DNA of 64,000 nt, from positions 3,882,436-3,946,435 of the forward strand of contig SMSO01000031.1 of NCBI GenBank assembly GCA_004764695.1, given 5' to 3'. Below, piece after piece: positions 19,598 through 33,544 of the stretch (its first letter is position 1; every line of letters begins with the position of its first letter). Both the position numbers and the translations under genes were made by a program. This stretch comes from Schizochytrium sp. TIO01 (lineage: Eukaryota; Protista; Bigyra: Labyrinthulomycetes). Under the pieces are notes generated by a model. The model searched no databases, was not told the DNA's origin, and saw only the letters and a program-made list of their open reading frames with translations.

Positions 19598-20226
19598 AGA
19601 TCGAACTAAATCATTGGCCTTTCCAGAGTCTAAAGTGGAGAGTGGTATAAATGTTTGTTCTAGTACGAGCACATGCCACTCTCACTCATCCATATAAACC
19701 TTCTGGTAGTAGTAAATGTTTTAGGTACAAAGTAGAACTAAACGCGAGAACTAGATAAAAAGCTGAGAAGTAGTACTACTGCCTATGTCTAACTACCTAC
19801 TGCTAGTTATTTTGAATTTTTAAAAAATTAAAAAAGGATTTTCGGATTAGCCTCTAACTAGGTACCTACTGAGTAGAATACCAAGGTGAGCTGAAGCGGA
19901 GCCTTCAACCGAAGCGAAGCACAATCAATACCTTTACTGGAGGTCGAAGATATCAGAGCAGATACAGAAAGCCCAGGCGAGTCTACGAACTTTGCAAAGT
20001 CCGCAGACCTCTTTTACATAAATATATATGAAATAGAAAGGTATTCTGCCAGAGACAAGCTTGCTTGGAAAGTGGTTTCCAAGAGGAAAAGATCTGACCC
20101 CATCGGCTTAACATAAATAGCAACCACTCGTGATCTCAGTCCAAGACTGCCCTAAGCTCTGAAGGTATCTCAGTAACGACTGGCAAGGACTATCGAACAT
20201 TTCTTTACCAAGTGATTGAAAGTAAA

Positions 20227-21831
20227 ATGTCTTCAACGGGCGTAGCATGGAAAGATGTCGAGCCTTTTCTGGGCCTCATCCTTGCGTCTGCGTTTTGCTT
20301 CGTATGCCAAGGATTAGGTAGCTCAAACAATGAAAACACTGTCAGAAAGGGGTGGACAAAAGCTGCAATGCAACGAAAGCGCATGGTTTTGCTTGCCTCA
20401 ACAAGCGGTCTAGTTCTTGGCTTTGCCTTGTTTTGTGGTATACTTGTGTTTACCCAATTTCCAGCAATGCTACAAACGACCCATCCTGCAATTGCCCAGT
20501 TGAAGACAGATGCCCGTGAACAATGTCATAAGCACATGGAAAATATGAACATCCTTGAAGCCGAAAAGTTAATTCGAGATAATACGAAAAGTAGAGAATT
20601 GGCGACAGAGTTTGCTAGCCAACAGCGTAAAACGCTGGATCGTGCCCTCCGTCCTTATCTCAACCAATTATTTTTCCGGATGGGCGCAATGTGCTCTGTT
20701 TTGCCTTTCTTTATCATTCTTGGGATTCAGATAATCTGCACTTTAGCCAAGTGGACACTTCCAAAGCAGCTCCCAACGCCGGCTGATATTACATTTGTTC
20801 TTCTGCCAATCGTTCAAATGGCCACTGCTTACACATGGGCTGTTACAATTTGTTTCCATTTCTGGCTTCGAGAAAGACAAGTTACAAACTGCATGCTTCT
20901 TTCTGGGCACTGGTACACAGCTCTTCACACAATTTGTGTATCTATCGCCACTGCAGGTTGGATGAGGATGGAATGCACGGGTGCAGACCAGAGTGAGACA
21001 CCAGGAAAACGGGTTTGGACAAGCTCATCATCATTGCTTCCACTTTATTACTTGGCATGGGTTATAGCGTATATTGCTCTGACCTCAAGAGTTCTTTCTA
21101 CTTCACAGCATTTCCATCATGATTGGCAGGAATCAGTAGAGGGTATCAAGTGTATGGTCATGACATTACCTTTCGCTGCTCTTGCTGGAGCCTTTGTTCT
21201 GTATATCTCAACCGAGCGAGCACAACTCGAGATTGCAGACACAGAATCATCAGGCTTTCAAAAGGGCCAAACAGCAGATGTACTTGAAAATTTCCAAGCG
21301 GAAAGTAATGTGGAGCTTGATGTCAAACTAGGGGATCTTGTCCTTGTTATCGATGCGTCTAATACTGGGTGGGTTTATGTTCAGCGCCAAGATGGTACAA
21401 AGGGTTATGTGCCTGATAGTTTTCTTGTTGTTTCTCAGCAACAGTTTGGCTTACTATCTAGACAATCACCAAACCTGGAAGATATTAAGGGTGATCCTTT
21501 GAATGCATCATCTCCTTCCTATGTAGACAATATCGCCTCGAAGAATGATGTATCTAGTTCGGAAAGAACACCTTCTGCCTCAAATGAAACAGTTAACTCA
21601 GCGGCTCCAAAGCCGGAGGCTCCAACACGAGCTGTACCATTTCTGAATGACATCCGAAATGGAAATGTTAACCTTAAAAAGGTTTCTCCTTCATCTTCTT
21701 CTGATAGCAATGGTGGTAGTAGTAAATCTCAAGGAAGCATGATGGGGGCGTTACAACAAGCACTTCACCAACGCAGAGCTACATTGAACCCACCTGAGGA
21801 TTCAAACGAGGAAAGCAGTGAATGGAACTAA
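20227..21831 (+). CDS. Multipass membrane protein: FIT/PAP2-like domain + SH3 + C-terminal WH2-C-A (WCA) module
   Basis: About 7 hydrophobic segments with LLSGH and HFHHDWQES..G motifs. SH3 (ELDVKLGD...GWVY...GYVPDSF). WH2 FLNDIRNGNVNLKKV, amphipathic MMGALQQALHQRR, acidic end EDSNEESSEWN*. Confidence 0.8.
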   Translation: MSSTGVAWKDVEPFLGLILASAFCFVCQGLGSSNNENTVRKGWTKAAMQRKRMVLLASTSGLVLGFALFCGILVFTQFPAMLQTTHPAIAQLKTDAREQCHKHMENMNILEAEKLIRDNTKSRELATEFASQQRKTLDRALRPYLNQLFFRMGAMCSVLPFFIILGIQIICTLAKWTLPKQLPTPADITFVLLPIVQMATAYTWAVTICFHFWLRERQVTNCMLLSGHWYTALHTICVSIATAGWMRMECTGADQSETPGKRVWTSSSSLLPLYYLAWVIAYIALTSRVLSTSQHFHHDWQESVEGIKCMVMTLPFAALAGAFVLYISTERAQLEIADTESSGFQKGQTADVLENFQAESNVELDVKLGDLVLVIDASNTGWVYVQRQDGTKGYVPDSFLVVSQQQFGLLSRQSPNLEDIKGDPLNASSPSYVDNIASKNDVSSSERTPSASNETVNSAAPKPEAPTRAVPFLNDIRNGNVNLKKVSPSSSSDSNGGSSKSQGSMMGALQQALHQRRATLNPPEDSNEESSEWN

Positions 21832-22132
21832 CAGTCAAAGCCTCCTTTTTCTCTTAGTTTCATTTTTAAAATAAATAATAAGTAATTTCTTTTTCTTTTT
21901 CTATTCTTAATTTTAAAACAAAACAAAAAAACTTTATTTTAAAATATAAAGTAAAAATATTGACAATTTTTTTACTAGTCATCATGCTATCTATGTACGT
22001 GGGAAACAGAATAGGTGTATCGCTCTTGAGATCATCATTGCAGATACCCGCAAGAATAGAAACGATACCAATAAGGGAAAATGCCAATGTAGATACCAGT
22101 CATGAGACTTAGGATTCTAAGCGAGTCGACTA

Positions 22133-25100
22133 TCAATTTAGTAAATGCGGCGGTGGTGGGGCCAAAATTGTGTTCAGGCTGGAACACGAAAGAAGATCAA
22201 TCATTTCTAAATTTTGTATTCGCAAATCAGACAACCGAGCTCGATCATCTACCTGAATCGGTGCGACGATGTGAGCAACATCAGAGTCGATTGAGTTGCT
22301 GGCCAGAAAATGCTTTTTGAACGCAGGTACTACGGGCTCCTCGAGAAAAGTACAAGCTAAAGTCTCCTGCTGTAGTATCGTTTGACTGTCAGATGAGAGT
22401 GCAATTACATGCCCTCTTCCAAAGACTACAATACTTCGAGTCTCCTCAAGAGTCCGTATTTTGACCTCAAATGAGTAGTTTGACGGAACCATGCCGGGAT
22501 GTACGCCAATTCGAATTTGCTTCACTGTGCCAGGTTTGAGCTCCGTTGTGTCATCAACCAAAACCTTAATTCTAGCTTGGCTTAAACACGTTTTAATAAT
22601 GTCGAAAGATAAAAAAACAGTGACGGATCCACTGTTGATTAGACGTATCTCCTGAAAGCAATAACTTCCGCATGGAGTTGCTCCAAAGTTGACTTCGCCA
22701 GAAAGTGGGGATATATCGACTCTGTATGTACCTCCAATTCCTAAAACATTTAAAATTTTATAACGTCCACGTGATTCCACAATGAAGTCTCCAGGAAAAC
22801 GACCAACATCACTAGCTTTGAAGAAAACATTTACATCTTGACTTTGCCGAGGCTCGAGGTTTCCTGAGTCAGGAGTCACTTCAAAGCCAGGTGCAACGGC
22901 GGGAATAGACCAGTCTAAGTCAATTTTCCCAGTGTTACAAATTTTGAAGGACCGCTGGTATTTTGTGCCTGGAGAGCAAACTCCAAAATTAATGGTGTCT
23001 CCCAAAACACGAAATTGTGGATAGACCCCAAGCCCACTCACTTGTATATCGAAAGTCCCAACATTCGATCGAAGCTTAATACTTCCCCGGAGTTCGTAAC
23101 TCCCCATAGGTTTCCAGCTTATAGCAAATGTACCTTCCCCGTAGCCTGGGATCGTTATTGTTTTAGGTGTAAGCTTCAAAGGAAAGCTAGGGGCCAGGTT
23201 AAGCTCGGCTGGGTATCCTCCATAATTCCTTATCGTTACACATTTGGTAATTAGATCACCCACGGCGCATGGACCCATACGAACCTGGGCGAATTCTGAA
23301 GGGCGAAGAGTGGAAGCATCACACTTCCCCTCCATCTGAATGATAGAAGTACTTCCAACGAGATCGGTTTCCACAAACAAGTCTTCACAAAACTCTCCTA
23401 GAAAGTTCTCCAAAAGTTGCTCTTGGACTTCGCTCTGAACCGGTCCAGAAAAAGTTGCAATAATCTCAATAGATTCCTTAGGTGGAAGTCGAGCTTCCCA
23501 TCTCGATAATTTAAAAGGAAAGGCCTTTTGGGGATCTACACGTCGAAGACGAAACGAGAAGGTCATGGTCCCAGTGTTTTCAAAGGTCACAGTAGCTTTG
23601 GCTGGCTTTGTGGCCTGAAAATGTCCAAAGTTGAACGATGGTGGGTAAACGTTTAAATAGGCTGTTCCTGCAATCAATCTTAGTGGAAGATCAAAATTGG
23701 AGTATATTGAAGACAATGCAATTCGGACATTGTCGGTTGTTTCTTCCATTGCCTTACTTGGAACATAAGTCACAGTGATGACTCTTTTCTCGAATGGGGA
23801 AATGGATAGACTTTGTGGTTCAACTTTTAAATCATTCAAAACGGTCCACTTGTGGGCTTTGGGCTCATTTCCTTCAGAGCAAATAAGCGAAACTTCTAGC
23901 GGGTACGTTAGATCCCCAGCATTCGAAACTTCGAATGAAGTTTTGTAGGCATTCCCAACTATACAATCAACGAAATCCACGCGTTGGACAGACAAACTAA
24001 GAACTGCCTCGCGACCACTGCCGGTGAGATCTAGCGTGTATGATCCTGTTGATGTATGAATTGTAAAAGTGTCCACAAAGTGACTTTCGGAGTGAGGATG
24101 GAATACGAGGGGAACATAAAAATTATCAGAAGGGGCAATTCTCAGCGGCTCCCCGGAGTCTAACGAATGCGGCCATGACTCCCCCTTGCGAAAAACAGAG
24201 TGGCTGTGTCTACTGTTCTTAAACGTAAGAGCCTTAATAGTAAGCACAGCATTTCCTGAGTTTCCAACTCGTAGACGCTTTGGTATGGTCTTGCCAACCA
24301 TGCAGCGGCCAAAGTCAAATATTTCATAGTGATCTAAATCCAGCTGAGGGTATCCACCGCCTGCATATACATCAAAAACGATAGGCGCAGTGCAATTGGT
24401 CTCAAATAAAATTGGATGTACACATAATCCCTCGCTCGATGGTGAGTAGACAAACTCAATCAGAACTAGATCACCTGGATTTAAAACGCCCTCGTTGGGC
24501 TCCACAACTAAATCATCATTGCCGTTTCGAATCCTAAATTCTGCTGCCATGGTACCTCGGTTCTCAAAGGTTCGAGCTATTACTTTTGTTTCACCTAAAG
24601 CCTGGCGTCCAAAATTAATCGTAGTCAAGTCATCAACTATGATTCTCACCTCTTGAGCCTCCGCCCGGACCGGGATTTCATATGGTTCTACACCTGGGAG
24701 CATAGATCCTACTACTAAGATAGCGTCCAGATAACCTTCAATAGAGGTGTTCAAGGAGACATTGACTTCCATGCTCATGCGCTCAGAAAGAGTACCCTGT
24801 TTTGGGCAAACCTGTAAGTGTGCAAGAGAGAATTTACTCTCTTCTAGCTCACGTTCCAGAAGCTGTTGAGGATCTTCAAATTCTGCATTATTCGATTGCT
24901 TTGTATCACCCGGAGTGGACGAGTTAATAAACTCTTGGAGGACTTTTGCATCCCTATCAGCATCATCCAACTTTGAACGGAACGCCTCAGAAAGATCTTG
25001 TGCTTCGTTCTTTTGCTTAGAAAGCTGCACCTCCTGATACTTATGAAATCGCTCCAATATGTGCTCCATTCGTGATCCCACTGCATCTCCTCGACTACAA

Positions 25101-28100
25101 AGATCCTGAAGAGCATCGCTTAGACCTGTTGAAGCAGAATTCGTTAGCCGAAGTTTCCGTTTTGCAAAGGATCCTGCCGAAACTAGCGATGATCTAGTTC
25201 TACCAATATCTGGGAGATCTGGAAACATCTCATGATGCTGATCCAGGTCCCAGATTACGTTTCTCTGTGCGCTTGTTAAAGGACGAAAATTGTTCATTTT
25301 GCGAGCGTCTCGGACTAATAATAGAACATTTTCAATAGCCCAATGCCACAATCTAAGTTGACCGAGCCTAGTTGTTGTACCTTTGAGCAAAATTGTAGCA
25401 GTCAAAACCCCCAGCCTCGCAAGTTCATAGGCATCTCTCGAGCCGGCTTTCATTTTCCAATAGAGCTGGACGCTGGTTGGAATCGATCCAGAGTTTGTAA
25501 GGGCAATCGATTTCGTGTAAGTGTGATCACAAGCAATGTTTCCGAAATTAAGATCTCCTACGTGGCCCAGCTTAACGCCCCCTCCTCTTGCTCGAAGTGG
25601 AACTGTCAACGAGTCAAATTCACTTCGAATTTTGAGAAGCCCCGAATAGGATATCTCACGTTCTGCGCATAGACGTACACGTAAGACCACAAAGTGTCCA
25701 GGATACAGAGCACACTCCACGACCGTGTCTCCATTCTTTTCGTTGCCGGCCGAAGAATACATGTCAATTGCAATTTTGCTTTGTTGCCGTGTTAATCCTG
25801 CATTTGAATTCTGCTTTGGAGGTCGGCGGATTACACTTGCACGAAAAGGCGCTAGCTGCTTTTGCTCTAGATTAGCTGATTTTTTATGACTTTGGTTTGA
25901 GGGATTACGCTGCTTTCGTGCTACCACCATAGGTGCTGACCCCTGGTCCTCGACTCGTTCTGCCTCTCCGCTTGACAGAGCAAACTTAGCGCTATATCCT
26001 GGGGTTGCACTTTGTATGTCATTTATACGAATGTGACCAATCGTATAATAGGGTGACGTGGATTCGCAAACAAGCTTTAATGGTACCTGGCCTGAGTTAT
26101 GGAACAATACTCTTTTCTCCATAAGAACATGCGTACTTACTAGCTGAAAGTCTAAGCCTTGCATATTTCTATCTCTTTGTGAGAGAAACTCAGGCTCCAG
26201 AACTCCCTGCCCCCCTAAACCAGCGACGTTAATCGTAAGTCTTTTCACACTGTTATAAACAACGGTGAAAACACCCTCAATATGATCACTGTGAGAAGGT
26301 TCGAATGCTATCTGTAGAGGGAGATACTCCCCAGGCTCGACTTTCCCATCTCGTGGGACAATACAGTACTCGCGAGGAACCTTTGATTGAACGTAAAATA
26401 ACGCTGGGATTTTCCCTGCATTATATAAAAGGATAGTGCGGCGATGTGATTGCCGCACTGCACGTACACCAAAATCAACAGCACTTTCAAGGTATGGTGT
26501 TTGGTCATTGTCGTATAACTCAAGGCTTGCAAAACCTTCCTTGGCACGCAAGGTGAGCTGTTCATAACCGGTGGCATGTCTTAAAAAGACTTTAGCTGAT
26601 AGTACCCTTTGATTTCCTACACCTGCTTCAGGAGAATTCTCAGGTGACTTAAATTTGAAACTAATCGGAGTCCTTCCATAAGCCTCGCAGGTACCTCGAG
26701 TTTCAATAGAGAATCCAAGACGACCTAAAGCTCGTGTAAAGTGCTCTGGAAGCATGGAAGTAGTCGATGATGAGCTCCTTCGACGGTTTATCCGAGATTT
26801 ACCAGCTCCAGATGTGATGCTTCCTCGCCTCCGATTTTCATTTTCTGTATTGTGCGCATACTGAAGCATAATTGACCTGACCGTGAGATCAGAGGGGTCA
26901 GGTTCCACACTAAAATCATAAGGAACATTTCCTGGGTTCATTGCGTGAATTACCTGCACATATTCTTGGTTGGCTTCGCACAAACCAAAATCAATTGTTC
27001 GAAGTGGAGTGTCAAGCTCAAGCAATGGATCTCCTCCAACGCCTCGAATTTCCGCTGGAATAGATTCAAAGCGATTTTGGATTACAAACAGAGCTCTAGT
27101 TTCGCGTTCACGTTCGAGTGGCTCGAATGATACAGTGAAGTGAATCATAACCCCCGTTGCAAAATTTCCATCCATAGGTTCGACCGTAAGATACTCAGGT
27201 GTGAACTCCTCAAAGTCTTTTGGAAATGAGAAAACATCAAGCCATGTTTGTTTTGCTTGGTTGAACGATTTCCGAGCTCCGGGTTTAGCGGATGATCGAT
27301 GTTGTCCCATTGCGTATGAGTCTCGTACTTGCTTTGCCTCTTCTCTGCTAGTAGCTTCCTTCGTCGGCCTCATAAATACGCAATGAAACTCAAGACTTAC
27401 GTCGCCAATGTTCGTAACTGTAAAGCTCCGATTATGTGTTTGCTTTACTAATGCAACATCAAAATCCAAATCATTCAAGGCCTGCTCAGGGGTAACACTA
27501 AGTTCGGGAATGCCAACATAGCCACATACATCAACTTCATAGCGTACACTTGGGTCCTGGGCCATCTTTACAACAATTGTGTCATCGAGACGATCAAGGG
27601 AGCTAGGACGGAAAATAATAGGTACCCAAATATTACCGCGTGATGGGACACGAATTCCATCGGGCCCATGCTCAACAGTCAGGCTCGAACATGGCATATC
27701 AAAGGTCACAAAACACTCTGCAGCGCCATAGTTGAAGATTTGTAGTAGGCTTGTGTTGGACACATTCAAGATGGCTTGGTCAAAGTCAACGCATGACTGT
27801 CGAACGTGTAATTGTGGCACACCAGCACTACCTCTGCATGCAACAGGTATGGTATGCAATACGGTATCTATGTTATCCCTCATGCTATCATTTAGAGTAC
27901 TCCATAGAATCTTCAATTCGCTATAAGATGCACCTTGTTCAGCAGCAACGTATGCAATGCTTATGTTCTGAGTTTTATTAGGTAGAATTGACCCCATCAG
28001 CGGGACAAAATTGAAGCTTGACGAAAACTGGGATCCTCTGCTTTCTTCCTGGCTCGAATTGCGATCTATGACAAATTCTGCCGCTAAATTGCCTTTATTA

Positions 28101-31100
28101 TGGAGTTGAAGCTCCACTAATTTGCGGTTCCCGATTGGAATACATCCAAAATCGAGCAGAAAGGAACCATCATCTTTCTCTGTTACACTTTCCATGTTGC
28201 CTGCATTTCCACAAGAAATAGAGATAAAGGCAGCGCCCGTTGCTCCGTATAATGTGACCTGTTGACTATGCCACTCGAACTTTGACTCTCGCGCTCCATC
28301 GATACAGCTTTCAAAGCCTACGCTCGCAGTAAGCGCTCGCTCCAGAACAGTCTCGTTGGGCTGAAAAATAACTTTGATACGCTGACTGCGTCCTGGTTCA
28401 ATCGTACATTCTGAGGGTGTTAGTGAAAAGAACTTGTTGTCGACTATATCACCGTACTCGGTTGTTTGTTCCAATTTTTGCGAAAATCCATTTGAAATTC
28501 GGGATTCTTCCGCATTATTTTCAACTTGTGGTGGAGCCGTTTGTTCTATCAATTTTGTTTCAAAACTACGGGCTCGAGTGAAACTCACATGGGAGCGCCA
28601 TTGAACATTAGCAACACCAATATTATGTATCGTTATGTACTTTGCCGAAGTGGATCCAGACGCAACTACCCCAAATTGGATGTCGGAAATGTCAATTGAC
28701 AGTGCAGGCTGAAACTTTGCAGCTACTCGGAAAGTATGAATCGTTGGTGCAGCAGCCCCTGGCTCTTCACTATGAATTTCGAGATTCTCTTCTAGATGAC
28801 CTGAGCTTCCTTGCTCATAGTCAATACTTAATATTATGCGAACTTCTTTTCCTGGTTCAAGATAGAACGGCAGTTTATCTGGCTGCAGCAAATCTGATGT
28901 GTACTTTCTGATTTTTGCGTAAAGCTCTTCCTTACTCGCAGGCTCTGCACGTTCATGTATGGAAGTAGGGGTTTCTGCATCTCTCATCTTGGTCTTGTTT
29001 TCTGCTGAGCTATTTGAGCGCAACCCCTCTAGTAATTTGAATGCTTCGGATCGTTTTTCTCGCCGAATTGTGTGCTCTACAGTACTTATCTGGTAGTCAA
29101 TCTCATCCCAATCAATAACATTTCGACTCTGACAGGTGAGTGAAAGTTGTAAGTCAGAAAATCGAGATGGTCTGTATGTTCCCTCTGAAATTTCGTGGTC
29201 CTTGTCCGTCAAAGCTTGGATCACTGCATCCTCAACCATTTGGTCAAGCTGCAGGGGGCAAAGACCAGGGGCTGACGGGTACTGCAACGCGTGAGCAGGT
29301 TTGGTTTGAATACTGATTTTCAACCATGGGGCTTTAGTGGTGAAGTCTATCAGTTCAACTGACCGCGAACCAGAATTTACCAGAACAAATTCTAATTGAG
29401 CAGTTTTTTTTTCTGCTGTGCTGATCGTACCAAAGTCAACACATGTTCCAGACTCAGCACTCCGTTCGGGTTGTGTTTTAGACTCGGAGTACAAATACAC
29501 TTGGGTAGGATCTCCAAAATTGCTTGATAAATTGCAATAACCTGCACGGGCACGAATCACAAGATACTCTGGCACCGCATTACCGGTTGCAGGCATAATT
29601 TGGCAGAAGCGTACACAACGACATGGTGCTTGTGGGTTTACACGGAAATCAAGAGGTATACGCTGCTCTGAGTTGGCAGTTGTACTGGGTTGATTAGTTA
29701 ACGGTGCAGGCAAGAGCACTGTAGTCTTGAAGTTACCTTGAACAATTTCAAATGGCCCCATATCCTCTAATGATAGTGACAACTGAACCCCATAGCGAAA
29801 TGAGTTCTTTAAAAGTATGCTCTGTTCGAGAATAGAACCGACAGAAATATCACCAAAATCCAGTACCTTAGGACTGATATGCACTGATGAAAAACTATAA
29901 ACACTTGCATCTAGCATCCCAGTAAAGACTTTGAGTGGTGTAACATCTGCATTTGCTGTATCGTCTTCATGCGAGGTAAATGGGTATTCGATTGTACACC
30001 GGACAGGGGCGGCAAATACTCCTTCAATGTGGCTTTGGAATTGTATGCAAAGGTCGAGCTGAGCCCATGGATGGACATGCAAGCTTAATTCATCCGTTGG
30101 TATTCGCTCCGGGTCAATTATAAGGAATGGTGAGGTTTCTGCATTTTGTATAATTCTTGTACTTAAATTTATCAGATGCGGTGTTTGGTTGCTGATTCGC
30201 AAAAGTCGTGAGTCAGCTTCTCCTCGATATAAACTTTGGAAAACAAGACCATCTTCAGGACACCGTACGGAAACTGGCGCAGTTGCTGCCCCTTGTAATA
30301 AGCACGAGCAATATTGATGAATGACCCCATGTTGTTCGTAAACAACCGAAAGAAACCCCCAAGTTGGAACGCTAGCTGTATCTTCTAGCTGAGGATCTAT
30401 TTCTATTATGAGTTCTAATGAGTCATGCGGGTCCACATAACCTTCAAGCAGACGCACTTGACGTAATACAAATGGACTCGAGACAAGAACTTTGTATGGC
30501 TGTGATATACTGGATGTATTACGCAGAGTAACACTTCCGTAACTTCGCTCATGAGACGAAGAATTTCCAAAAATATAGGAAACACTCTTGCTGAGCTGAA
30601 GGCAGTAAGCTTCAGCTCCATCAGTTCCGGTATTCGCAGACCCTGTTTGTCCATGTCCAAATCCAGTTTCCTCATTTTCATCCTCTGAGTCCTCAGAGTT
30701 TTCGTCGTATTCATGGCTCCCAGGCTGTTCGTGAGAAATTGATACTGCCAAAAGACTCCTAAGACGGTTGTATGTAAGTCTCTTGGAACCCAGCTGTCTG
30801 GTGTCACCACTAATATCTTTCCCAATACAAGGTATTGTAACAAACCAAGGTCCATAAGTGATTCGATGAGGGTGAACTAGCTCAATTCGGATTGGAAGTC
30901 GATACAGGCCTGGTTTCGACGATAAAAATTTAATTTCTACTGTGGCATCCTCCTGTGAATGCAAAACTATCGTTGCGCCTCCTCGAAGATCCGTTGCTTC
31001 TTGAGTAGGTGACTGATACCAAGCTGAGCAGGGTGAGTCTTCAAATCCAGTTATGAAGAGTTCTACAGAGCTTTCACTATAGTTCTTCAAAGGAAGTTCA

Positions 31101-33544
31101 AACTGGGATTCTAAACCGGTTGATTGTATTGGAAAGTTCACGCTCTGAGACAACGGAATGGACACAAGCTGTCCCACAAAAGCTGATAGTGATACATACT
31201 GTGCAGAGTATCCCGGGGCAGTAACATTCAACTTTGCATTAAATTCACCTGTAAAGTAAGGTCTGATGCTGATTTCAACTTCACGTCTTTCCCCTGGTTG
31301 TAAGATAACTGGTGAGCATGAAACCTCTTCAGGTCGATTTGATATGAAACGTACCTGAAGTGAGTTTTCTGGGTCTAAATTTTCAATATGTAAGGTTTTG
31401 GAGGCAGAAGCGAGCGCTGATCGTCCACAGATCCCTGGAATGAATGAAGCGTTTGCTTTAGAAGATTCAGCATGCAAAAGACCAAATGCAAGATCATCCT
31501 CGAATAGTCGTAACGGTGAGCCGCCATGGCCAGTAACCTTCACTTGGTGAACCTCACTTCCGGTCCCGGTTACGACAAGCACGTCTTGGTACCCCTTTGC
31601 TTCGCGAGGGCTGAAGAACACATCAACCCAAAACTCTGTTCCAGGAAGTATCAATACTTGCGTCTGTCGTATGGTAAAAACAGGATCCTCCTGCAAAAGA
31701 GAAATTGAGCAATTGCAGGGGACTGGTGAACAATTACGAATGATTACAGGGAGTGATAAAGCCTGGTTTGATCTACGTTGAACAGGCACATAGCCGAAAT
31801 TCAAGCGAGAGTCTTGAACCTGAAGATATGGTCCATGAATTGCAGATAAGCTTAGTCGCTCGCCAGGAAGACCTGCATTTGTGCGGACACGTAGAAATCC
31901 TGCAATACGAATGCTTGCCAGAGACGAATTAGAAAGATCTTGCACAAACCTCAGGAGTATCTTGCAGGAGGCTTTAGCTTCTACAACACCATAGGCAGGG
32001 GTGGCCAGAAAATGTTGACTGGGAAACGTTTGCAGAGAAAAAAACTCTTGTGTGGTACCTGGGTTTGTCAGATAGAGGACTACTTCCTCTTTAGAGCCCA
32101 AGAACGAGATTTCATTTTGTTGAATCTGGAACGTGAGGCCACTTGTAAACTCAGAAGGAAGAGTCATATCTACCTCCTCCTCATCATCATCTTGTAGATT
32201 TGCGTCTATCTGGGTGTCTTCTTGCAGACCAATAGCTGCAGACGTGGCGAAATTAGTTGCTGTGTACAAACTGAGTTTTGAATCTGAAGAGCTGGAGGAC
32301 TCAATTTCAAATTGCGCATGTAGTGTATAGTCGTTACTTCGGTTATTGTTGTCAGAAAAAGACGTTGACCTCTTACTATATCCATGCAAATAGTGATATC
32401 GGCGGGGAATATATCCGCCTTGAGAACTCGAAGTTACTTTACCCCTATTATCTGATCCTTTTGAGATATTTGACCACGTTCTATTGTTATAGACTGAATG
32501 AGGACGTTCAGATAGCGCACGAGTAGAAGTTATTTGATGTTCTAAGTTCGAATCCTGTGTAATTTGGTGTCTTCTATTTCTTGCATGTTCTAATAAACTC
32601 TTAACTTCTTCTTCGAGTTTAGATAGCGTGCCAGAATATTTCACAACATGAGCTTGACGTGCGAGGGTCCGAACAATAGAACAGTCAATGCTAGCAATGA
32701 AATTATCACTTGGGATGTGAAACCAGCGACAGATGAACCAGCTTGCTTCAGTGCATAAGAAATCTGGCATTTTGCGGTTGACCCATTTATTTTTCCTCTT
32801 CACCACAAAAATTTGGTAAACTAGCGAACGAAGAGGCTCTACTATATTTTGCCTAGTTTCGTATGTATCGTCTAGAGATTGTCTTAGAGTTTTCAGAAGT
32901 GCAGCCACAAGCAAAGGGTGGTGCATGGTCCATTTCGACTCTACTAGAATGTCATCGTTGAGACTAGCAACAGTGACAAGTACTTTGCGAGCCTCGTTGA
33001 AAAATGCTTGGATCAAAGGAGATCCGATACCATTTTGATGAGCCACTAAAGTAAGAAACGGCCCAGCAGCTGTTGTAGCGGCAATGGCATGGGGAACATT
33101 CTTCTTAGAGTAGGACGAAATAAATAGCTCTGTGACAGTTGCAATCGAATCAGCTACAATGTATTCACGAAAAGAACCTGGATTTAACTCTGGTACAGTG
33201 AGTCCTAGCACGAGCCCAGCAATGAATCTGTTTTCCTGTCGTTCATCAGCACTTAATATACTCCTCAGTAGCTCGAAAATCCTACTTTGTAGACTTGGGT
33301 CACGAAGTGGGACGCGAAGTTTCGTTGCAGAAAGAGATAAAGCTCTGAGAACAAGTTCACGGAATGTTGGCTCTGGGTGCTCAAGAAGTGAAATCAAGCG
33401 TGAAAGCATCGAAGAATTTATTGCATAACCAGAACCCTGGCACGCGCCTAGAGTGTTGGCTGTATCTCCTGTGAGTAAAACTCGTAACGCATGTTCTGCA
33501 TCGCCAAGGTTGTCTTTAGTAGAGTTCTCTGTCTGACTATTCAT
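22133..33544 (-). CDS. Giant (3803 aa) protein with many tandem ASH/Hydin-like Ig domains, likely ciliary/axonemal
   Basis: Recurrent (L/V)DFG...x20...N.G...P..G.L.PG signatures along most of the length, with a helical HEAT/ARM-like N-terminus. Single 11.4-kb ORF. Confidence 0.8.
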   Translation of the reverse strand: MNSQTENSTKDNLGDAEHALRVLLTGDTANTLGACQGSGYAINSSMLSRLISLLEHPEPTFRELVLRALSLSATKLRVPLRDPSLQSRIFELLRSILSADERQENRFIAGLVLGLTVPELNPGSFREYIVADSIATVTELFISSYSKKNVPHAIAATTAAGPFLTLVAHQNGIGSPLIQAFFNEARKVLVTVASLNDDILVESKWTMHHPLLVAALLKTLRQSLDDTYETRQNIVEPLRSLVYQIFVVKRKNKWVNRKMPDFLCTEASWFICRWFHIPSDNFIASIDCSIVRTLARQAHVVKYSGTLSKLEEEVKSLLEHARNRRHQITQDSNLEHQITSTRALSERPHSVYNNRTWSNISKGSDNRGKVTSSSQGGYIPRRYHYLHGYSKRSTSFSDNNNRSNDYTLHAQFEIESSSSSDSKLSLYTATNFATSAAIGLQEDTQIDANLQDDDEEEVDMTLPSEFTSGLTFQIQQNEISFLGSKEEVVLYLTNPGTTQEFFSLQTFPSQHFLATPAYGVVEAKASCKILLRFVQDLSNSSLASIRIAGFLRVRTNAGLPGERLSLSAIHGPYLQVQDSRLNFGYVPVQRRSNQALSLPVIIRNCSPVPCNCSISLLQEDPVFTIRQTQVLILPGTEFWVDVFFSPREAKGYQDVLVVTGTGSEVHQVKVTGHGGSPLRLFEDDLAFGLLHAESSKANASFIPGICGRSALASASKTLHIENLDPENSLQVRFISNRPEEVSCSPVILQPGERREVEISIRPYFTGEFNAKLNVTAPGYSAQYVSLSAFVGQLVSIPLSQSVNFPIQSTGLESQFELPLKNYSESSVELFITGFEDSPCSAWYQSPTQEATDLRGGATIVLHSQEDATVEIKFLSSKPGLYRLPIRIELVHPHRITYGPWFVTIPCIGKDISGDTRQLGSKRLTYNRLRSLLAVSISHEQPGSHEYDENSEDSEDENEETGFGHGQTGSANTGTDGAEAYCLQLSKSVSYIFGNSSSHERSYGSVTLRNTSSISQPYKVLVSSPFVLRQVRLLEGYVDPHDSLELIIEIDPQLEDTASVPTWGFLSVVYEQHGVIHQYCSCLLQGAATAPVSVRCPEDGLVFQSLYRGEADSRLLRISNQTPHLINLSTRIIQNAETSPFLIIDPERIPTDELSLHVHPWAQLDLCIQFQSHIEGVFAAPVRCTIEYPFTSHEDDTANADVTPLKVFTGMLDASVYSFSSVHISPKVLDFGDISVGSILEQSILLKNSFRYGVQLSLSLEDMGPFEIVQGNFKTTVLLPAPLTNQPSTTANSEQRIPLDFRVNPQAPCRCVRFCQIMPATGNAVPEYLVIRARAGYCNLSSNFGDPTQVYLYSESKTQPERSAESGTCVDFGTISTAEKKTAQLEFVLVNSGSRSVELIDFTTKAPWLKISIQTKPAHALQYPSAPGLCPLQLDQMVEDAVIQALTDKDHEISEGTYRPSRFSDLQLSLTCQSRNVIDWDEIDYQISTVEHTIRREKRSEAFKLLEGLRSNSSAENKTKMRDAETPTSIHERAEPASKEELYAKIRKYTSDLLQPDKLPFYLEPGKEVRIILSIDYEQGSSGHLEENLEIHSEEPGAAAPTIHTFRVAAKFQPALSIDISDIQFGVVASGSTSAKYITIHNIGVANVQWRSHVSFTRARSFETKLIEQTAPPQVENNAEESRISNGFSQKLEQTTEYGDIVDNKFFSLTPSECTIEPGRSQRIKVIFQPNETVLERALTASVGFESCIDGARESKFEWHSQQVTLYGATGAAFISISCGNAGNMESVTEKDDGSFLLDFGCIPIGNRKLVELQLHNKGNLAAEFVIDRNSSQEESRGSQFSSSFNFVPLMGSILPNKTQNISIAYVAAEQGASYSELKILWSTLNDSMRDNIDTVLHTIPVACRGSAGVPQLHVRQSCVDFDQAILNVSNTSLLQIFNYGAAECFVTFDMPCSSLTVEHGPDGIRVPSRGNIWVPIIFRPSSLDRLDDTIVVKMAQDPSVRYEVDVCGYVGIPELSVTPEQALNDLDFDVALVKQTHNRSFTVTNIGDVSLEFHCVFMRPTKEATSREEAKQVRDSYAMGQHRSSAKPGARKSFNQAKQTWLDVFSFPKDFEEFTPEYLTVEPMDGNFATGVMIHFTVSFEPLERERETRALFVIQNRFESIPAEIRGVGGDPLLELDTPLRTIDFGLCEANQEYVQVIHAMNPGNVPYDFSVEPDPSDLTVRSIMLQYAHNTENENRRRGSITSGAGKSRINRRRSSSSTTSMLPEHFTRALGRLGFSIETRGTCEAYGRTPISFKFKSPENSPEAGVGNQRVLSAKVFLRHATGYEQLTLRAKEGFASLELYDNDQTPYLESAVDFGVRAVRQSHRRTILLYNAGKIPALFYVQSKVPREYCIVPRDGKVEPGEYLPLQIAFEPSHSDHIEGVFTVVYNSVKRLTINVAGLGGQGVLEPEFLSQRDRNMQGLDFQLVSTHVLMEKRVLFHNSGQVPLKLVCESTSPYYTIGHIRINDIQSATPGYSAKFALSSGEAERVEDQGSAPMVVARKQRNPSNQSHKKSANLEQKQLAPFRASVIRRPPKQNSNAGLTRQQSKIAIDMYSSAGNEKNGDTVVECALYPGHFVVLRVRLCAEREISYSGLLKIRSEFDSLTVPLRARGGGVKLGHVGDLNFGNIACDHTYTKSIALTNSGSIPTSVQLYWKMKAGSRDAYELARLGVLTATILLKGTTTRLGQLRLWHWAIENVLLLVRDARKMNNFRPLTSAQRNVIWDLDQHHEMFPDLPDIGRTRSSLVSAGSFAKRKLRLTNSASTGLSDALQDLCSRGDAVGSRMEHILERFHKYQEVQLSKQKNEAQDLSEAFRSKLDDADRDAKVLQEFINSSTPGDTKQSNNAEFEDPQQLLERELEESKFSLAHLQVCPKQGTLSERMSMEVNVSLNTSIEGYLDAILVVGSMLPGVEPYEIPVRAEAQEVRIIVDDLTTINFGRQALGETKVIARTFENRGTMAAEFRIRNGNDDLVVEPNEGVLNPGDLVLIEFVYSPSSEGLCVHPILFETNCTAPIVFDVYAGGGYPQLDLDHYEIFDFGRCMVGKTIPKRLRVGNSGNAVLTIKALTFKNSRHSHSVFRKGESWPHSLDSGEPLRIAPSDNFYVPLVFHPHSESHFVDTFTIHTSTGSYTLDLTGSGREAVLSLSVQRVDFVDCIVGNAYKTSFEVSNAGDLTYPLEVSLICSEGNEPKAHKWTVLNDLKVEPQSLSISPFEKRVITVTYVPSKAMEETTDNVRIALSSIYSNFDLPLRLIAGTAYLNVYPPSFNFGHFQATKPAKATVTFENTGTMTFSFRLRRVDPQKAFPFKLSRWEARLPPKESIEIIATFSGPVQSEVQEQLLENFLGEFCEDLFVETDLVGSTSIIQMEGKCDASTLRPSEFAQVRMGPCAVGDLITKCVTIRNYGGYPAELNLAPSFPLKLTPKTITIPGYGEGTFAISWKPMGSYELRGSIKLRSNVGTFDIQVSGLGVYPQFRVLGDTINFGVCSPGTKYQRSFKICNTGKIDLDWSIPAVAPGFEVTPDSGNLEPRQSQDVNVFFKASDVGRFPGDFIVESRGRYKILNVLGIGGTYRVDISPLSGEVNFGATPCGSYCFQEIRLINSGSVTVFLSFDIIKTCLSQARIKVLVDDTTELKPGTVKQIRIGVHPGMVPSNYSFEVKIRTLEETRSIVVFGRGHVIALSSDSQTILQQETLACTFLEEPVVPAFKKHFLASNSIDSDVAHIVAPIQVDDRARLSDLRIQNLEMIDLLSCSSLNTILAPPPPHLLN

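What the first reader, a model, noticed from the sequence alone, without database searches (positions are those of the whole stretch)
20227..21831. Candidate integral-membrane Arp2/3 activator: FIT/PAP2-like lipid enzyme + SH3 + complete WCA module
Seen: the protein ends with WH2 (FLNDIRNGNVNLKKV, about 21640-21684), a Ser/Gly linker, an amphipathic helix (SMMGALQQALHQRR, 21736-21777) and an acidic tail with a penultimate Trp (EDSNEESSEWN*). Before these lie an SH3 domain (about 21274-21426) and about 7 hydrophobic segments. Known: W-C-A in this order at the C-terminus defines class I nucleation-promoting factors (WASP, WAVE, WASH, WHAMM, JMY). These are soluble proteins recruited to membranes, not multipass proteins. 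Inference: this protein hard-wires branched-actin nucleation to a membrane it spans. If the host is a labyrinthulomycete, candidate sites are the ER-linked bothrosome / actin-based ectoplasmic net or lipid droplets. I know of no described protein with this architecture.
Basis: partly seen in the sequence, partly recalled or inferred. Interest (0 to 1): 0.92.

Follow-up and report, generated by a model that had tools for sequence, protein, structure and literature searches.

The report
Membrane-spanning candidate Arp2/3 activator family
This gene encodes a seven-helix membrane protein whose cytosolic tail carries the complete actin- and Arp2/3-binding module of WASP-type actin nucleation factors; it belongs to a conserved protist family that no paper I found describes, and it suggests that some cells build a branched-actin trigger directly into a membrane protein.

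Summary
Window 20227-21831 (+) is one intronless 534-aa gene. Transcript-like contigs cover it end to end. It has seven transmembrane helices (AlphaFold pLDDT 92.5), a Pfam-significant SH3 domain, and a C-terminal WH2, C helix and acidic tail with Trp533.

The same layout recurs in about 20 homologues from Labyrinthulomycetes (Hondaea, Mucochytrium), Ichthyosporea (Sphaeroforma, Creolimax) and unnamed eukaryotes. Relatives outside the labyrinthulomycete clade carry poly-proline instead of SH3. L483, R517 and W533 are at least 90% conserved.

A family profile finds the N-WASP V-C region as the best PDB sequence match (E 2.8e-5). A complex model places the WH2 in actin's barbed-end cleft (0.64; best control 0.00). 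The genome encodes ARPC2, ARPC4 and actin. The positive-inside rule puts the tail in the cytosol.

The membrane domain has no Pfam match. It carries FIT/PAP2-type SGH and HxxxE motifs at the expected lumenal positions, and PAP2 enzymes are its best, though weak, structural matches (Z 5-6).

Best reading: a new integral-membrane subfamily of class I nucleation-promoting factors with a FIT/PAP2-like anchor. Arp2/3 activation, localisation and enzymatic activity are untested. The proposed link to the bothrosome is weakened, because the family also occurs in Ichthyosporea, outside the labyrinthulomycetes.

The parts
19938..21874 (+). Transcript-like unit: about 285 nt leader, whole ORF, about 40 nt trailer
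   Evidence: Contigs of two likely-RNA runs lie colinear on 19943-21874 (1932 nt) and 19938-21842 (1930 nt, ending in Illumina adapter), with no gap or joint. Depth is 368, against 20 for the neighbouring gene.
20227..21831 (+). Coding sequence, 534 aa plus stop, no intron
   Evidence: An identical 534-aa protein is on record from MMETSP, JGI and Logan.
20227..21240 (+). Seven-helix membrane domain (aa 1-338). TM cores lie at about aa 13-31, 54-75, 150-173, 188-210, 227-247, 271-290 and 306-328.
   Evidence: AlphaFold2 with 28 sequences: pLDDT 92.5, pTM 0.91. Hydropathy. No Pfam family.
20458..20631 (+). Helical subdomain in the long loop between TM2 and TM3 (aa 78-135), predicted lumenal or external. 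It holds invariant R97 and C100.
20890..20913 (+). Invariant C222 followed by S226-G227-H228-W229 at the start of TM5 (C2-like SGH motif)
   Evidence: C222 in 28/28, S226 in 27/28, G227, H228 and W229 each in 26/28. Its position matches C2 of LPT/FIT enzymes as described in PMC5798408.
21112..21144 (+). F296-x-H298-D299-x-x-E302-x-x-x-G306 in the TM6-TM7 turn (FIT-type C3-like HxxxE motif)
   Evidence: Q294, H298, D299 and E302 are present in every sequence that covers the region. This compares with the extended FITM C3 motif given in PMC5798408.
21274..21426 (+). SH3 domain (aa 350-400)
   Evidence: Pfam SH3_9, SH3_1 and SH3_2 above cut-off. PDB SH3 matches, e.g. p47phox at 1.3e-5. pLDDT 92-95 in the full-length model.
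21427..21636 (+). Disordered Ser/Pro-rich linker (aa 401-470). It ends in P463-E-A-P-T-R468, which fits a PxxPxR pattern and could be an SH3 ligand.
   Evidence: pLDDT below 50. The motif was read from the sequence. The ligand role is inference only.
21634..21684 (+). WH2 (V) motif, aa 470-486
   Evidence: Short helix at 472-477. The predicted actin interface uses residues 470-486. P471 and L483 are at least 90% conserved.
21736..21786 (+). C (connector) amphipathic helix, aa 504-520, with R516 and R517
   Evidence: Helix at 505-520. It aligns to the N-WASP C region. The Arg is present in 20 of 20 family tails.
21796..21828 (+). Acidic (A) tail, aa 524-534, with penultimate Trp533 (codon 21823-21825)
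   Evidence: Trp lies within the last 7 residues in 18 of 20 family tails, and Phe replaces it in the other 2. W533 is at least 90% conserved.

Best explanation
The gene encodes an integral-membrane class I-type nucleation-promoting factor. Seven helices cross the membrane with the N-terminus outside (lumen or exterior) and the C-terminus in the cytosol. The cytosolic part is an SH3 domain, a roughly 70-aa disordered linker and a W-C-A module. The WH2 loads an actin monomer through actin's barbed-end cleft. The C helix and the acidic Trp tail engage the Arp2/3 complex. Branched filaments are therefore nucleated directly at the membrane that holds the protein. No GTPase-binding or other known autoinhibitory domain is present, so activity is probably set by local density or clustering and by SH3 partners (poly-proline and profilin partners in relatives). 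The membrane domain most likely belongs to the lipid phosphatase/phosphotransferase (PAP2)-FIT superfamily. Its conserved His/His/Glu site and a Cys pair face the lumen or exterior, which could couple lipid or acyl-CoA chemistry, or lipid sensing, to actin assembly. Shown here: the gene and transcript, the domain architecture, its conservation, similarity to N-WASP V-C, and presence of Arp2/3 genes. Supported by models: actin docking, topology and fold. Inferred: Arp2/3 activation, enzymatic activity and which membrane is involved.
For: One ORF and one colinear transcript-like contig in two runs. SH3 above Pfam cut-offs. About 20 homologues keep the order membrane domain, then SH3 or poly-proline, then WH2, C and A. 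P471, L483, R517 and W533 are at least 90% conserved, as conserved as the membrane-domain motif residues. Family profile against PDB sequences: N-WASP V-C is the top hit at E 2.8e-5, spanning WH2 and C, and N-WASP CA chimeras follow. Pfam WH2 is hit in 7 of 28 members. Complex model of own-genome actin with tail aa 462-534: ipSAE 0.64 against a best control of 0.00. The mark was reached by 51 of 78 solved complexes and 2 of 108 mismatched pairs in the microbial calibration. Runs agree in at least 68% of contacts and partner pLDDT is at least 47. The interface is tail 470-486 on actin 24-29, 144-149, 168-169 and 342-356. The full-length model shows helices at exactly 472-477 and 505-520 in an otherwise disordered tail. 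ARPC2 (198.8 bits), ARPC4 (195.4 bits), actin and Arp-like genes are in the genome. Topology: K+R in loops 1, 3 and 5 exceeds K+R in the N-terminus and loops 4 and 6 in 19 of 23 sequences, and invariant C100 and C222 both fall on the predicted lumenal side. Membrane domain: SGH and HxxxE...G motifs at the LPT/FIT positions. PgpB (Z 5.8 with 183 aligned; Z 5.4 with 174 aligned), Aur1, SMSr and LpxE are among the top long structural alignments.
Against: No biochemical data exist, so Arp2/3 activation is inferred from motif homology. The window protein's own WH2 is below Pfam reporting. The complex pass may reflect the model's memory of solved WH2-actin structures, and the partner's pLDDT is under 50. 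Two relatives have Phe instead of Trp, and three have degenerate WH2 motifs. The FIT/PAP2 link has no profile support: no Pfam PAP2 or FIT hit, and hhalign against own-genome PAP2 proteins gives probability 0.3%. Foldseek finds nothing, and Z 5-6 is within the noise range stated for helical bundles. The canonical HxxxD and a conserved C1 motif are absent. Topology is predicted, not measured. The RNA nature of the runs is a guess by the tool.
Confidence: 0.68

Rival explanations
1. The tail binds G-actin and/or Arp2/3 but does not activate nucleation. It would act as a membrane tether, a sequestering factor or a competitive inhibitor, as acidic-Trp proteins such as Arpin do.
For: Only binding-type evidence is available. 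There is no poly-proline tract in the window protein. Two relatives have Phe in place of Trp.
Against: V, C and A are all present in the canonical order and spacing, and each is conserved. From my own knowledge, known inhibitors carry only the A motif. The C helix aligns with that of N-WASP, including the Arg.
Confidence: 0.15
2. The membrane domain is not a FIT/PAP2 relative. It would be a new fold or family that serves only as an anchor or sensor, and the SGH and HxxxE motifs would be convergent.
For: No Pfam, hhalign or Foldseek support. Z is only 5-6. There are seven rather than six helices. H298 and D299 are adjacent rather than spaced as HxxxD, and no C1 motif is conserved.
Against: The motifs sit at the positions that define LPT/FIT enzymes: the end of core loop 3/4 and loop 5/6, both on the lumenal side. 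The extended aromatic-aromatic-H-x-x-x-E-x-x-x-G pattern matches the published FITM C3 block. Six PAP2-superfamily entries (five proteins) appear among the top 32 of 48,161 chains, with near-full-length alignments.
Confidence: 0.35
3. The WCA resemblance is a chance product of a low-complexity disordered tail and has no actin function.
For: The tail is Ser-rich and disordered. The protein's own WH2 is below Pfam threshold.
Against: The motifs are conserved across lineages whose membrane domains are only 20-30% identical, while the linkers vary freely. The profile match to N-WASP is significant. The complex model passed its controls.
Confidence: 0.04
4. The C-terminus is lumenal or extracellular (for example if TM1 is a cleaved signal peptide), so the tail never meets actin.
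For: In some relatives the N-terminal hydrophobic segment looks like a signal peptide.
Against: TM1 packs confidently into the bundle, with pLDDT about 95. Its flanking W-K-x-x-E-P-F motif is conserved. Loop 1 is strongly basic. SH3 domains and WCA modules are cytosolic modules (established knowledge).
Confidence: 0.03

Closest known systems
WASP-family class I nucleation-promoting factors (WASP/N-WASP, WAVE/SCAR, WASH, WHAMM/JMY, WHIMP, and the proposed WAWH and WAML)
   Same: C-terminal WH2, connector helix and acidic Trp tail in the same order. Relatives have a poly-proline region upstream. The sequence is significantly similar to N-WASP V-C. The predicted WH2-actin contact is canonical.
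   Different: None of the N-terminal domains that define those subfamilies (WH1, SHD, WAHD, WMD, IMD) is present. Instead there is a seven-helix integral membrane domain. The known families are soluble or peripheral. The word 'transmembrane' does not occur in the 2012 catalogue, and the 2023 review never applies it to an NPF.
FIT/FITM proteins (FIT2, Scs3p/Yft2p) and the wider PAP2/LPT superfamily (PgpB, LpxE, SMS, Aur1)
   Same: A polytopic core with SGH at the lumenal start of one helix and HxxxE...G in the next lumenal turn. There are conserved lumenal cysteines. PAP2 enzymes are the best long structural matches.
   Different: No HMM or profile match. There is an extra N-terminal helix and a 70-aa helical lumenal insert. 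No conserved C1 motif is present. The Cys pair bridges two different loops. The cytosolic SH3 and WCA extension is not reported for FIT or PAP2 proteins in the papers I read.
Membrane-anchored actin assembly factors: Listeria ActA and plant class I formins
   Same: The nucleation-promoting or nucleating activity is fixed to a membrane by the protein's own membrane span (my own knowledge).
   Different: Those proteins have a single anchor helix and no enzyme-like polytopic domain. ActA is bacterial, and formins do not act through Arp2/3.
PDZ-WCA protein of the same genome (L019:1273-3819)
   Same: A lineage-specific NPF-like protein with WH2 repeats, a very similar C helix and an acidic Trp tail.
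   Different: It is soluble, has PDZ and CCDC53-C-like motifs, and has no membrane domain.

Membership tests
Class I NPF (WCA-bearing, WASP-family type) | WH2/V motif that binds G-actin | tested here: met
   The motif is at aa 472-486. The family profile aligns it to the N-WASP WH2. Pfam WH2 is hit in 7/28 members, best 9e-05, but not in the window protein itself. The actin complex model scores 0.64 against a best control of 0.00, with cleft contacts. Actual binding was not measured.
Class I NPF (WCA-bearing, WASP-family type) | Connector (C) amphipathic helix with a conserved Arg | tested here: met
   Helix at 505-520. It aligns with the N-WASP C region. The Arg is present in 20/20 tails, and R517 is at least 90% conserved.
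Class I NPF (WCA-bearing, WASP-family type) | Acidic C-terminal tail with a conserved Trp | tested here: met
   The window protein has 5 acidic and 0 basic residues in its last 15, with Trp533. Trp occurs in 18/20 relatives and Phe in 2/20.
Class I NPF (WCA-bearing, WASP-family type) | Proline-rich region upstream of WCA | tested here: not met
   The window protein has no run of 4 or more Pro and carries an SH3 in that place. Most relatives outside the labyrinthulomycete clade have poly-proline runs.
Class I NPF (WCA-bearing, WASP-family type) | Stimulates Arp2/3-dependent nucleation | not testable with these tools
   Only the presence of Arp2/3 genes could be shown: ARPC2, ARPC4 and Arp-like actins.
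Known WASP-family subfamilies (WASP, WAVE, WASH, WHAMM/JMY) | Subfamily-specific N-terminal domain (WH1, SHD, WAHD, WMD) | tested here: not met
   Pfam finds none of these in the protein. WAHD and WH1 domains occur in other genes of the genome.
PAP2/LPT superfamily | Match to the PAP2 profile (PF01569) | tested here: not met
   No hit at E<=10 for the window protein or E<=1 for 28 members. hhalign against 12 own-genome PAP2 frames gives probability 0.3%.
PAP2/LPT superfamily | C1 motif KxxxxxxRP in the lumenal loop before C2 | tested here: not met
   The literal match at aa 135-143 lies in a different loop, and its K and R are not conserved: K in 6/28 and R in 7/28.
PAP2/LPT superfamily and FIT | C2 motif SGH at the end of the lumenal loop, at the start of a TM helix | tested here: met
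   S226 in 27/28, G227 in 26/28 and H228 in 26/28, at the N-terminus of helix 227-252. The definition is from PMC5798408.
PAP2/LPT superfamily | C3 motif with HxxxD spacing | tested here: not met
   The sequence is H298-D299-x-x-E302, so the Asp is adjacent to the His rather than at +4.
FIT/FITM | C3 variant HxxxE with aromatic residues before the His and Gly at +8 | tested here: met
   F296, an aromatic or His at 297, H298, E302 and G306 are conserved. The published block is quoted. This is a motif-level comparison only.
FIT/FITM | Match to the FIT profile (PF10261) | tested here: not met
   No hit in the protein or its relatives. There is also no PF10261 match anywhere in the genome at E<=0.1.
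PAP2/LPT superfamily and FIT | Six-helix PAP2 fold | tested here: inconclusive
   VIA-align 2: PgpB Z 5.8 (183/201 aligned) and Z 5.4, Aur1 5.3, SMSr 5.2 and 5.0, LpxE 4.9. Foldseek gives no match at E<=0.001.

The most novel reading that the evidence does not exclude
This would be an ancient eukaryotic family, present in both stramenopiles and holozoans. In it, a lumen-facing FIT/PAP2-type lipid or acyl-CoA phosphatase is physically fused to a cytosolic WCA module, so that lipid metabolism or lipid sensing in the ER (or another endomembrane) directly triggers Arp2/3 branched-actin assembly on that membrane. It would be a sixth type of WASP-family nucleation-promoting factor and the first integral-membrane one.
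Probability: 0.3. Interest if true: 0.92.

Novelty: new variant of a known kind. Interest (0 to 1): 0.82.

Why it matters
Known Arp2/3 activators are soluble and must be recruited to membranes by GTPases, lipids or adaptors. A polytopic membrane protein that carries its own WCA module would be a different way of deciding where branched actin forms. The domain fused to it resembles FIT, an ER enzyme involved in lipid-droplet budding and ER homeostasis. That makes a direct link between lipid metabolism and actin testable. It is especially relevant in thraustochytrids, which are industrial producers of DHA-rich oil and can be transformed. The family also occurs in Ichthyosporea, close relatives of animals, so it bears on how the WASP family evolved.

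Tried and rejected
1. Pfam on the tail alone and on the N-terminal 338 aa found no family.
2. The metagenome contig scan with alignment A1 found no relative.
No genomic context or taxonomy could therefore be obtained for the unnamed homologues.
4. The representative search with the full A1 profile was largely swamped by a CCDC53-C-like motif. That motif is present only in two homologues and not in the window protein, so those hits were discarded.
5. The word-based search with a membrane-domain-only alignment added nothing new.
6. The ESM Atlas gave only a weak TMEM117 lead (0.76, below the usable range). Pfam TMEM117 was not hit by any member, so the lead was rejected for lack of support.
7. 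Foldseek against the PDB found nothing. The top TTYH rows have TM-scores of only 0.11-0.17.
8. hhalign against own-genome PAP2 proteins gave no signal.
9. The literal KxxxxxxRP match at aa 135-143 was rejected as a C1 motif because it is not conserved.
10. A gene-fusion or gene-model artefact was rejected on the transcript contigs and on the recurrence of the architecture.
11. There is no paralogue in the genome.
12. A direct profile comparison with FIT sequences was not done, because no tool supplied FIT sequences by reference.
Full report
THE GENE

Window 20227-21831 (+) is a single uninterrupted ORF of 534 codons. The first ATG agrees with the N-termini of the homologues.

Contigs from two public runs that the tool guesses to be RNA lie colinear on 19943-21874 and 19938-21842, with no gap or joint. 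One ends in Illumina adapter. Its depth is 368, against 20 for the convergent neighbouring gene and about 3 upstream. An identical 534-aa protein is on record from MMETSP, JGI and Logan.

The membrane part, the SH3 and the tail are therefore one intronless transcript. There is no paralogue in the 64-Mb genome. The closest named relative is a hypothetical protein of the thraustochytrid Hondaea fermentalgiana, so the host is a labyrinthulomycete.

ANATOMY

- Hydropathy gives six strong peaks and one weaker one.
- AlphaFold2 on aa 1-345 with 28 family sequences gives a confident bundle (pLDDT 92.5, pTM 0.91). It has seven long helices and a small helical subdomain (aa 78-135) in the loop between TM2 and TM3.
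- Pfam finds SH3_9, SH3_1 and SH3_2 above their cut-offs at aa 352-400, and PDB SH3 domains match.
- In the full-length model the SH3 folds with pLDDT above 90 and aa 411-470 are disordered. The tail contains just two helices, at 472-477 and 505-520, which coincide with the WH2 helix and the C region.

A word-based search found three homologues. A full HMMER scan of 1.84 billion representatives found about 27 clusters that match the membrane domain. The many other hits in that list match a CCDC53-C-like motif that two homologues carry and the window protein lacks, so I set them aside.

Named members come from:
- Labyrinthulomycetes: Hondaea and Mucochytrium quahogii.
- Ichthyosporea: Sphaeroforma arctica SARC_08706 and Creolimax fragrantissima.
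- One MMETSP sample labelled Chloroparvula, which is a fragment and could be contamination.

The rest are unnamed. A maximum-likelihood tree groups the SH3-bearing sequences with the labyrinthulomycetes. It separates an ichthyosporean clade and several unnamed clades.

Twenty members have complete tails.
- All 20 have the C-region pattern with its Arg.
- 18 end in an acidic stretch with Trp within the last seven residues, and the other two have Phe there.
- 17 match a simple WH2 pattern, some of them twice or three times.

Members outside the labyrinthulomycete clade have poly-proline runs where the window protein has its SH3. In a 20-sequence full-length alignment, P471, L483, R517 and W533 are at least 90% conserved. 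That is as high as the best residues of the membrane domain, although the linkers are unalignable.

IS THE TAIL A WCA MODULE?

Pfam WH2 does not report the window protein's own motif. It does hit 7 of 28 family members, the best at 9e-05.

A profile of the family searched against all PDB sequences returns the N-WASP V-C fragment (2vcp_D) as the top hit at E 2.8e-5. The alignment runs through both the WH2 and the C helix. N-WASP CA chimeras from an Arp2/3 structure follow.

A complex model of the genome's own actin (L015:1492-2619) with tail aa 462-534 scored 0.64, against a best control of 0.00.
- The mark was reached by 51 of 78 solved complexes and 2 of 108 mismatched pairs in the microbial calibration.
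- The runs agree in at least 68% of contacts.
- Partner pLDDT is at least 47.
- The confident interface is tail 470-486 on actin residues 24-29, 144-149, 168-169 and 342-356. From my own knowledge this is the cleft between subdomains 1 and 3 that WH2 domains use.
- The tool warns that such a pass may come from memory of solved WH2-actin complexes. It therefore shows likeness, not binding.

The genome encodes ARPC2 (198.8 bits), ARPC4 (195.4 bits), conventional actin and several Arp-like proteins. It also has a weak WAHD match and WH1 proteins, so this protein would be an additional activator rather than the only one.

TOPOLOGY

Across 23 near-complete membrane domains, loops 1, 3 and 5 carry more Lys and Arg than the N-terminus and loops 4 and 6 in 19 cases. 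The means are about 7.9 and 3.0, and loop 1 has a net charge of +2.8.

This predicts the N-terminus outside and the C-terminus in the cytosol. The SGH motif, the HxxxE motif, R97 and the two invariant cysteines (C100, C222) then all lie on the lumenal or external side. That is consistent with a disulphide and with where LPT/FIT active sites lie.

TM1 is confidently packed into the bundle, and its flank is conserved within the labyrinthulomycete clade. This argues against a cleaved signal peptide.

THE MEMBRANE DOMAIN

Evidence against a FIT/PAP2 relationship:
- No Pfam family matches it in any of 28 members.
- hhalign against PAP2 proteins of the same genome is negative.
- Foldseek finds nothing.
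- The classical HxxxD and a conserved C1 motif are absent. The literal KxxxxxxRP at aa 135-143 is not conserved.

Evidence for a relationship:
- The exhaustive structural search puts Bacillus PgpB first (Z 5.8, 183 of 201 residues aligned). It also lists E. coli PgpB (Z 5.4), Aur1 (5.3), SMSr (5.2 and 5.0) and LpxE (4.9) among the few long alignments. Each Z is within the range the tool calls unremarkable for helical bundles. The recurrence of one small superfamily among the top 32 of 48,161 chains is, by my inference, unlikely to be chance.
- The paper that linked FIT proteins to LPT enzymes defines C2 as SGH at the end of lumenal loop 3/4. It defines C3 as HxxxD (LPT) or HxxxE (FIT) in loop 5/6, with an extended FIT block of two aromatics, His, Glu at +4 and Gly at +8 (PMC5798408).
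- If TM2-TM7 are taken as the six-helix core, the family's S226-G227-H228 and F296-x-H298-x-x-x-E302-x-x-x-G306 sit in exactly those places, and they are nearly invariant.

I rate FIT/PAP2 membership as likelier than not (about 0.6) but unproven. No PF10261 (FIT) match was found anywhere in the genome. The tool cautions that this does not show absence.

MECHANISM

The best-supported reading is a membrane-embedded class I-type nucleation-promoting factor. The WH2 delivers an actin monomer. The C and A regions engage Arp2/3. The polytopic domain fixes the site of nucleation.

With no recognisable autoinhibitory domain, control probably comes from clustering and from SH3 or poly-proline partners. 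A PxxPxR-type motif (aa 463-468) directly before the WH2 could be an SH3 ligand, which is a speculative lead for autoinhibition.

The state of the lumenal site might influence the tail, but nothing here tests that. Because the family occurs in Ichthyosporea, a function tied to the labyrinthulomycete bothrosome or ectoplasmic net is less likely than a general endomembrane or cortical role.

COMPARISON WITH KNOWN SYSTEMS AND NOVELTY

[quoted passage not shown] A 2023 review of the family never applies that word, or 'integral membrane', to an NPF (PMC10330494). Full-text searches that combined WCA/VCA or WH2 terms with transmembrane, FITM, thraustochytrid or ichthyosporean terms found no description of such a protein. 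A 2025 proteome study of Aurantiochytrium ectoplasmic-net candidates does not mention WH2, SH3, Arp2 or WASP.

I therefore class this as a new variant of a known kind: a WCA-type activator with a new, integral-membrane, enzyme-like N-terminal domain.

LIMITS

- Arp2/3 activation, actin binding, topology, localisation and catalysis are all untested.
- The RNA nature of the runs is the tool's guess.

Noticed in passing
L019:1273-3819 (G000:C33, about 3557272-3559818): A second unusual WCA protein in the same genome (848 aa). It has a PDZ domain, a CCDC53-C-like motif, two to three WH2 motifs (41.5 bits), a C helix very like the one studied here, and an acidic tail with two Trp. It looks like another lineage-specific nucleation-promoting factor.
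   Followed up: partly
P0003 aa 406-482 and P0004 aa 444-474 (homologues, not in the window): Two labyrinthulomycete-clade homologues carry a motif that Pfam assigns to the C-terminus of WASH-complex subunit CCDC53, located between the SH3 and the WH2. Hundreds of unrelated proteins in the representative library have repeats of this motif. Its function here is unknown.
   Followed up: no
window 22133-33544 (-): The convergent neighbour is a 3803-aa protein made of HYDIN/CFAP65/Cep192-type ASH/Ig-like repeats, probably flagellar or centrosomal. Its stop lies about 300 nt from the stop of the gene studied, and one contig runs across both genes.
   Followed up: partly
P0065 and P0104 (homologues): A well-supported sister pair of family members has the membrane domain but no WCA. 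P0065 ends in a WW domain instead (Pfam WW, 5.7e-05), so the cytosolic module appears to be exchangeable.
   Followed up: no
whole genome G000: No match to the Pfam FIT family (PF10261) at E<=0.1 anywhere in the 64-Mb genome, while 13 PAP2 matches exist. It is an open question whether the family studied here stands in for canonical FIT.
   Followed up: partly
L002 (G000:C30:4252665-4252748): The best Pfam WH2 hit in the genome (37.5 bits) lies at the end of a 284-aa Gly/Pro-rich open frame, possibly a verprolin/WIP-like protein.
   Followed up: no
window 21613-21630: A P-E-A-P-T-R motif (PxxPxR type) lies directly upstream of the WH2, and a similar A-P-T-R-x-V-P occurs in homologue P0077. It could be a ligand for the protein's own SH3.
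   Followed up: no
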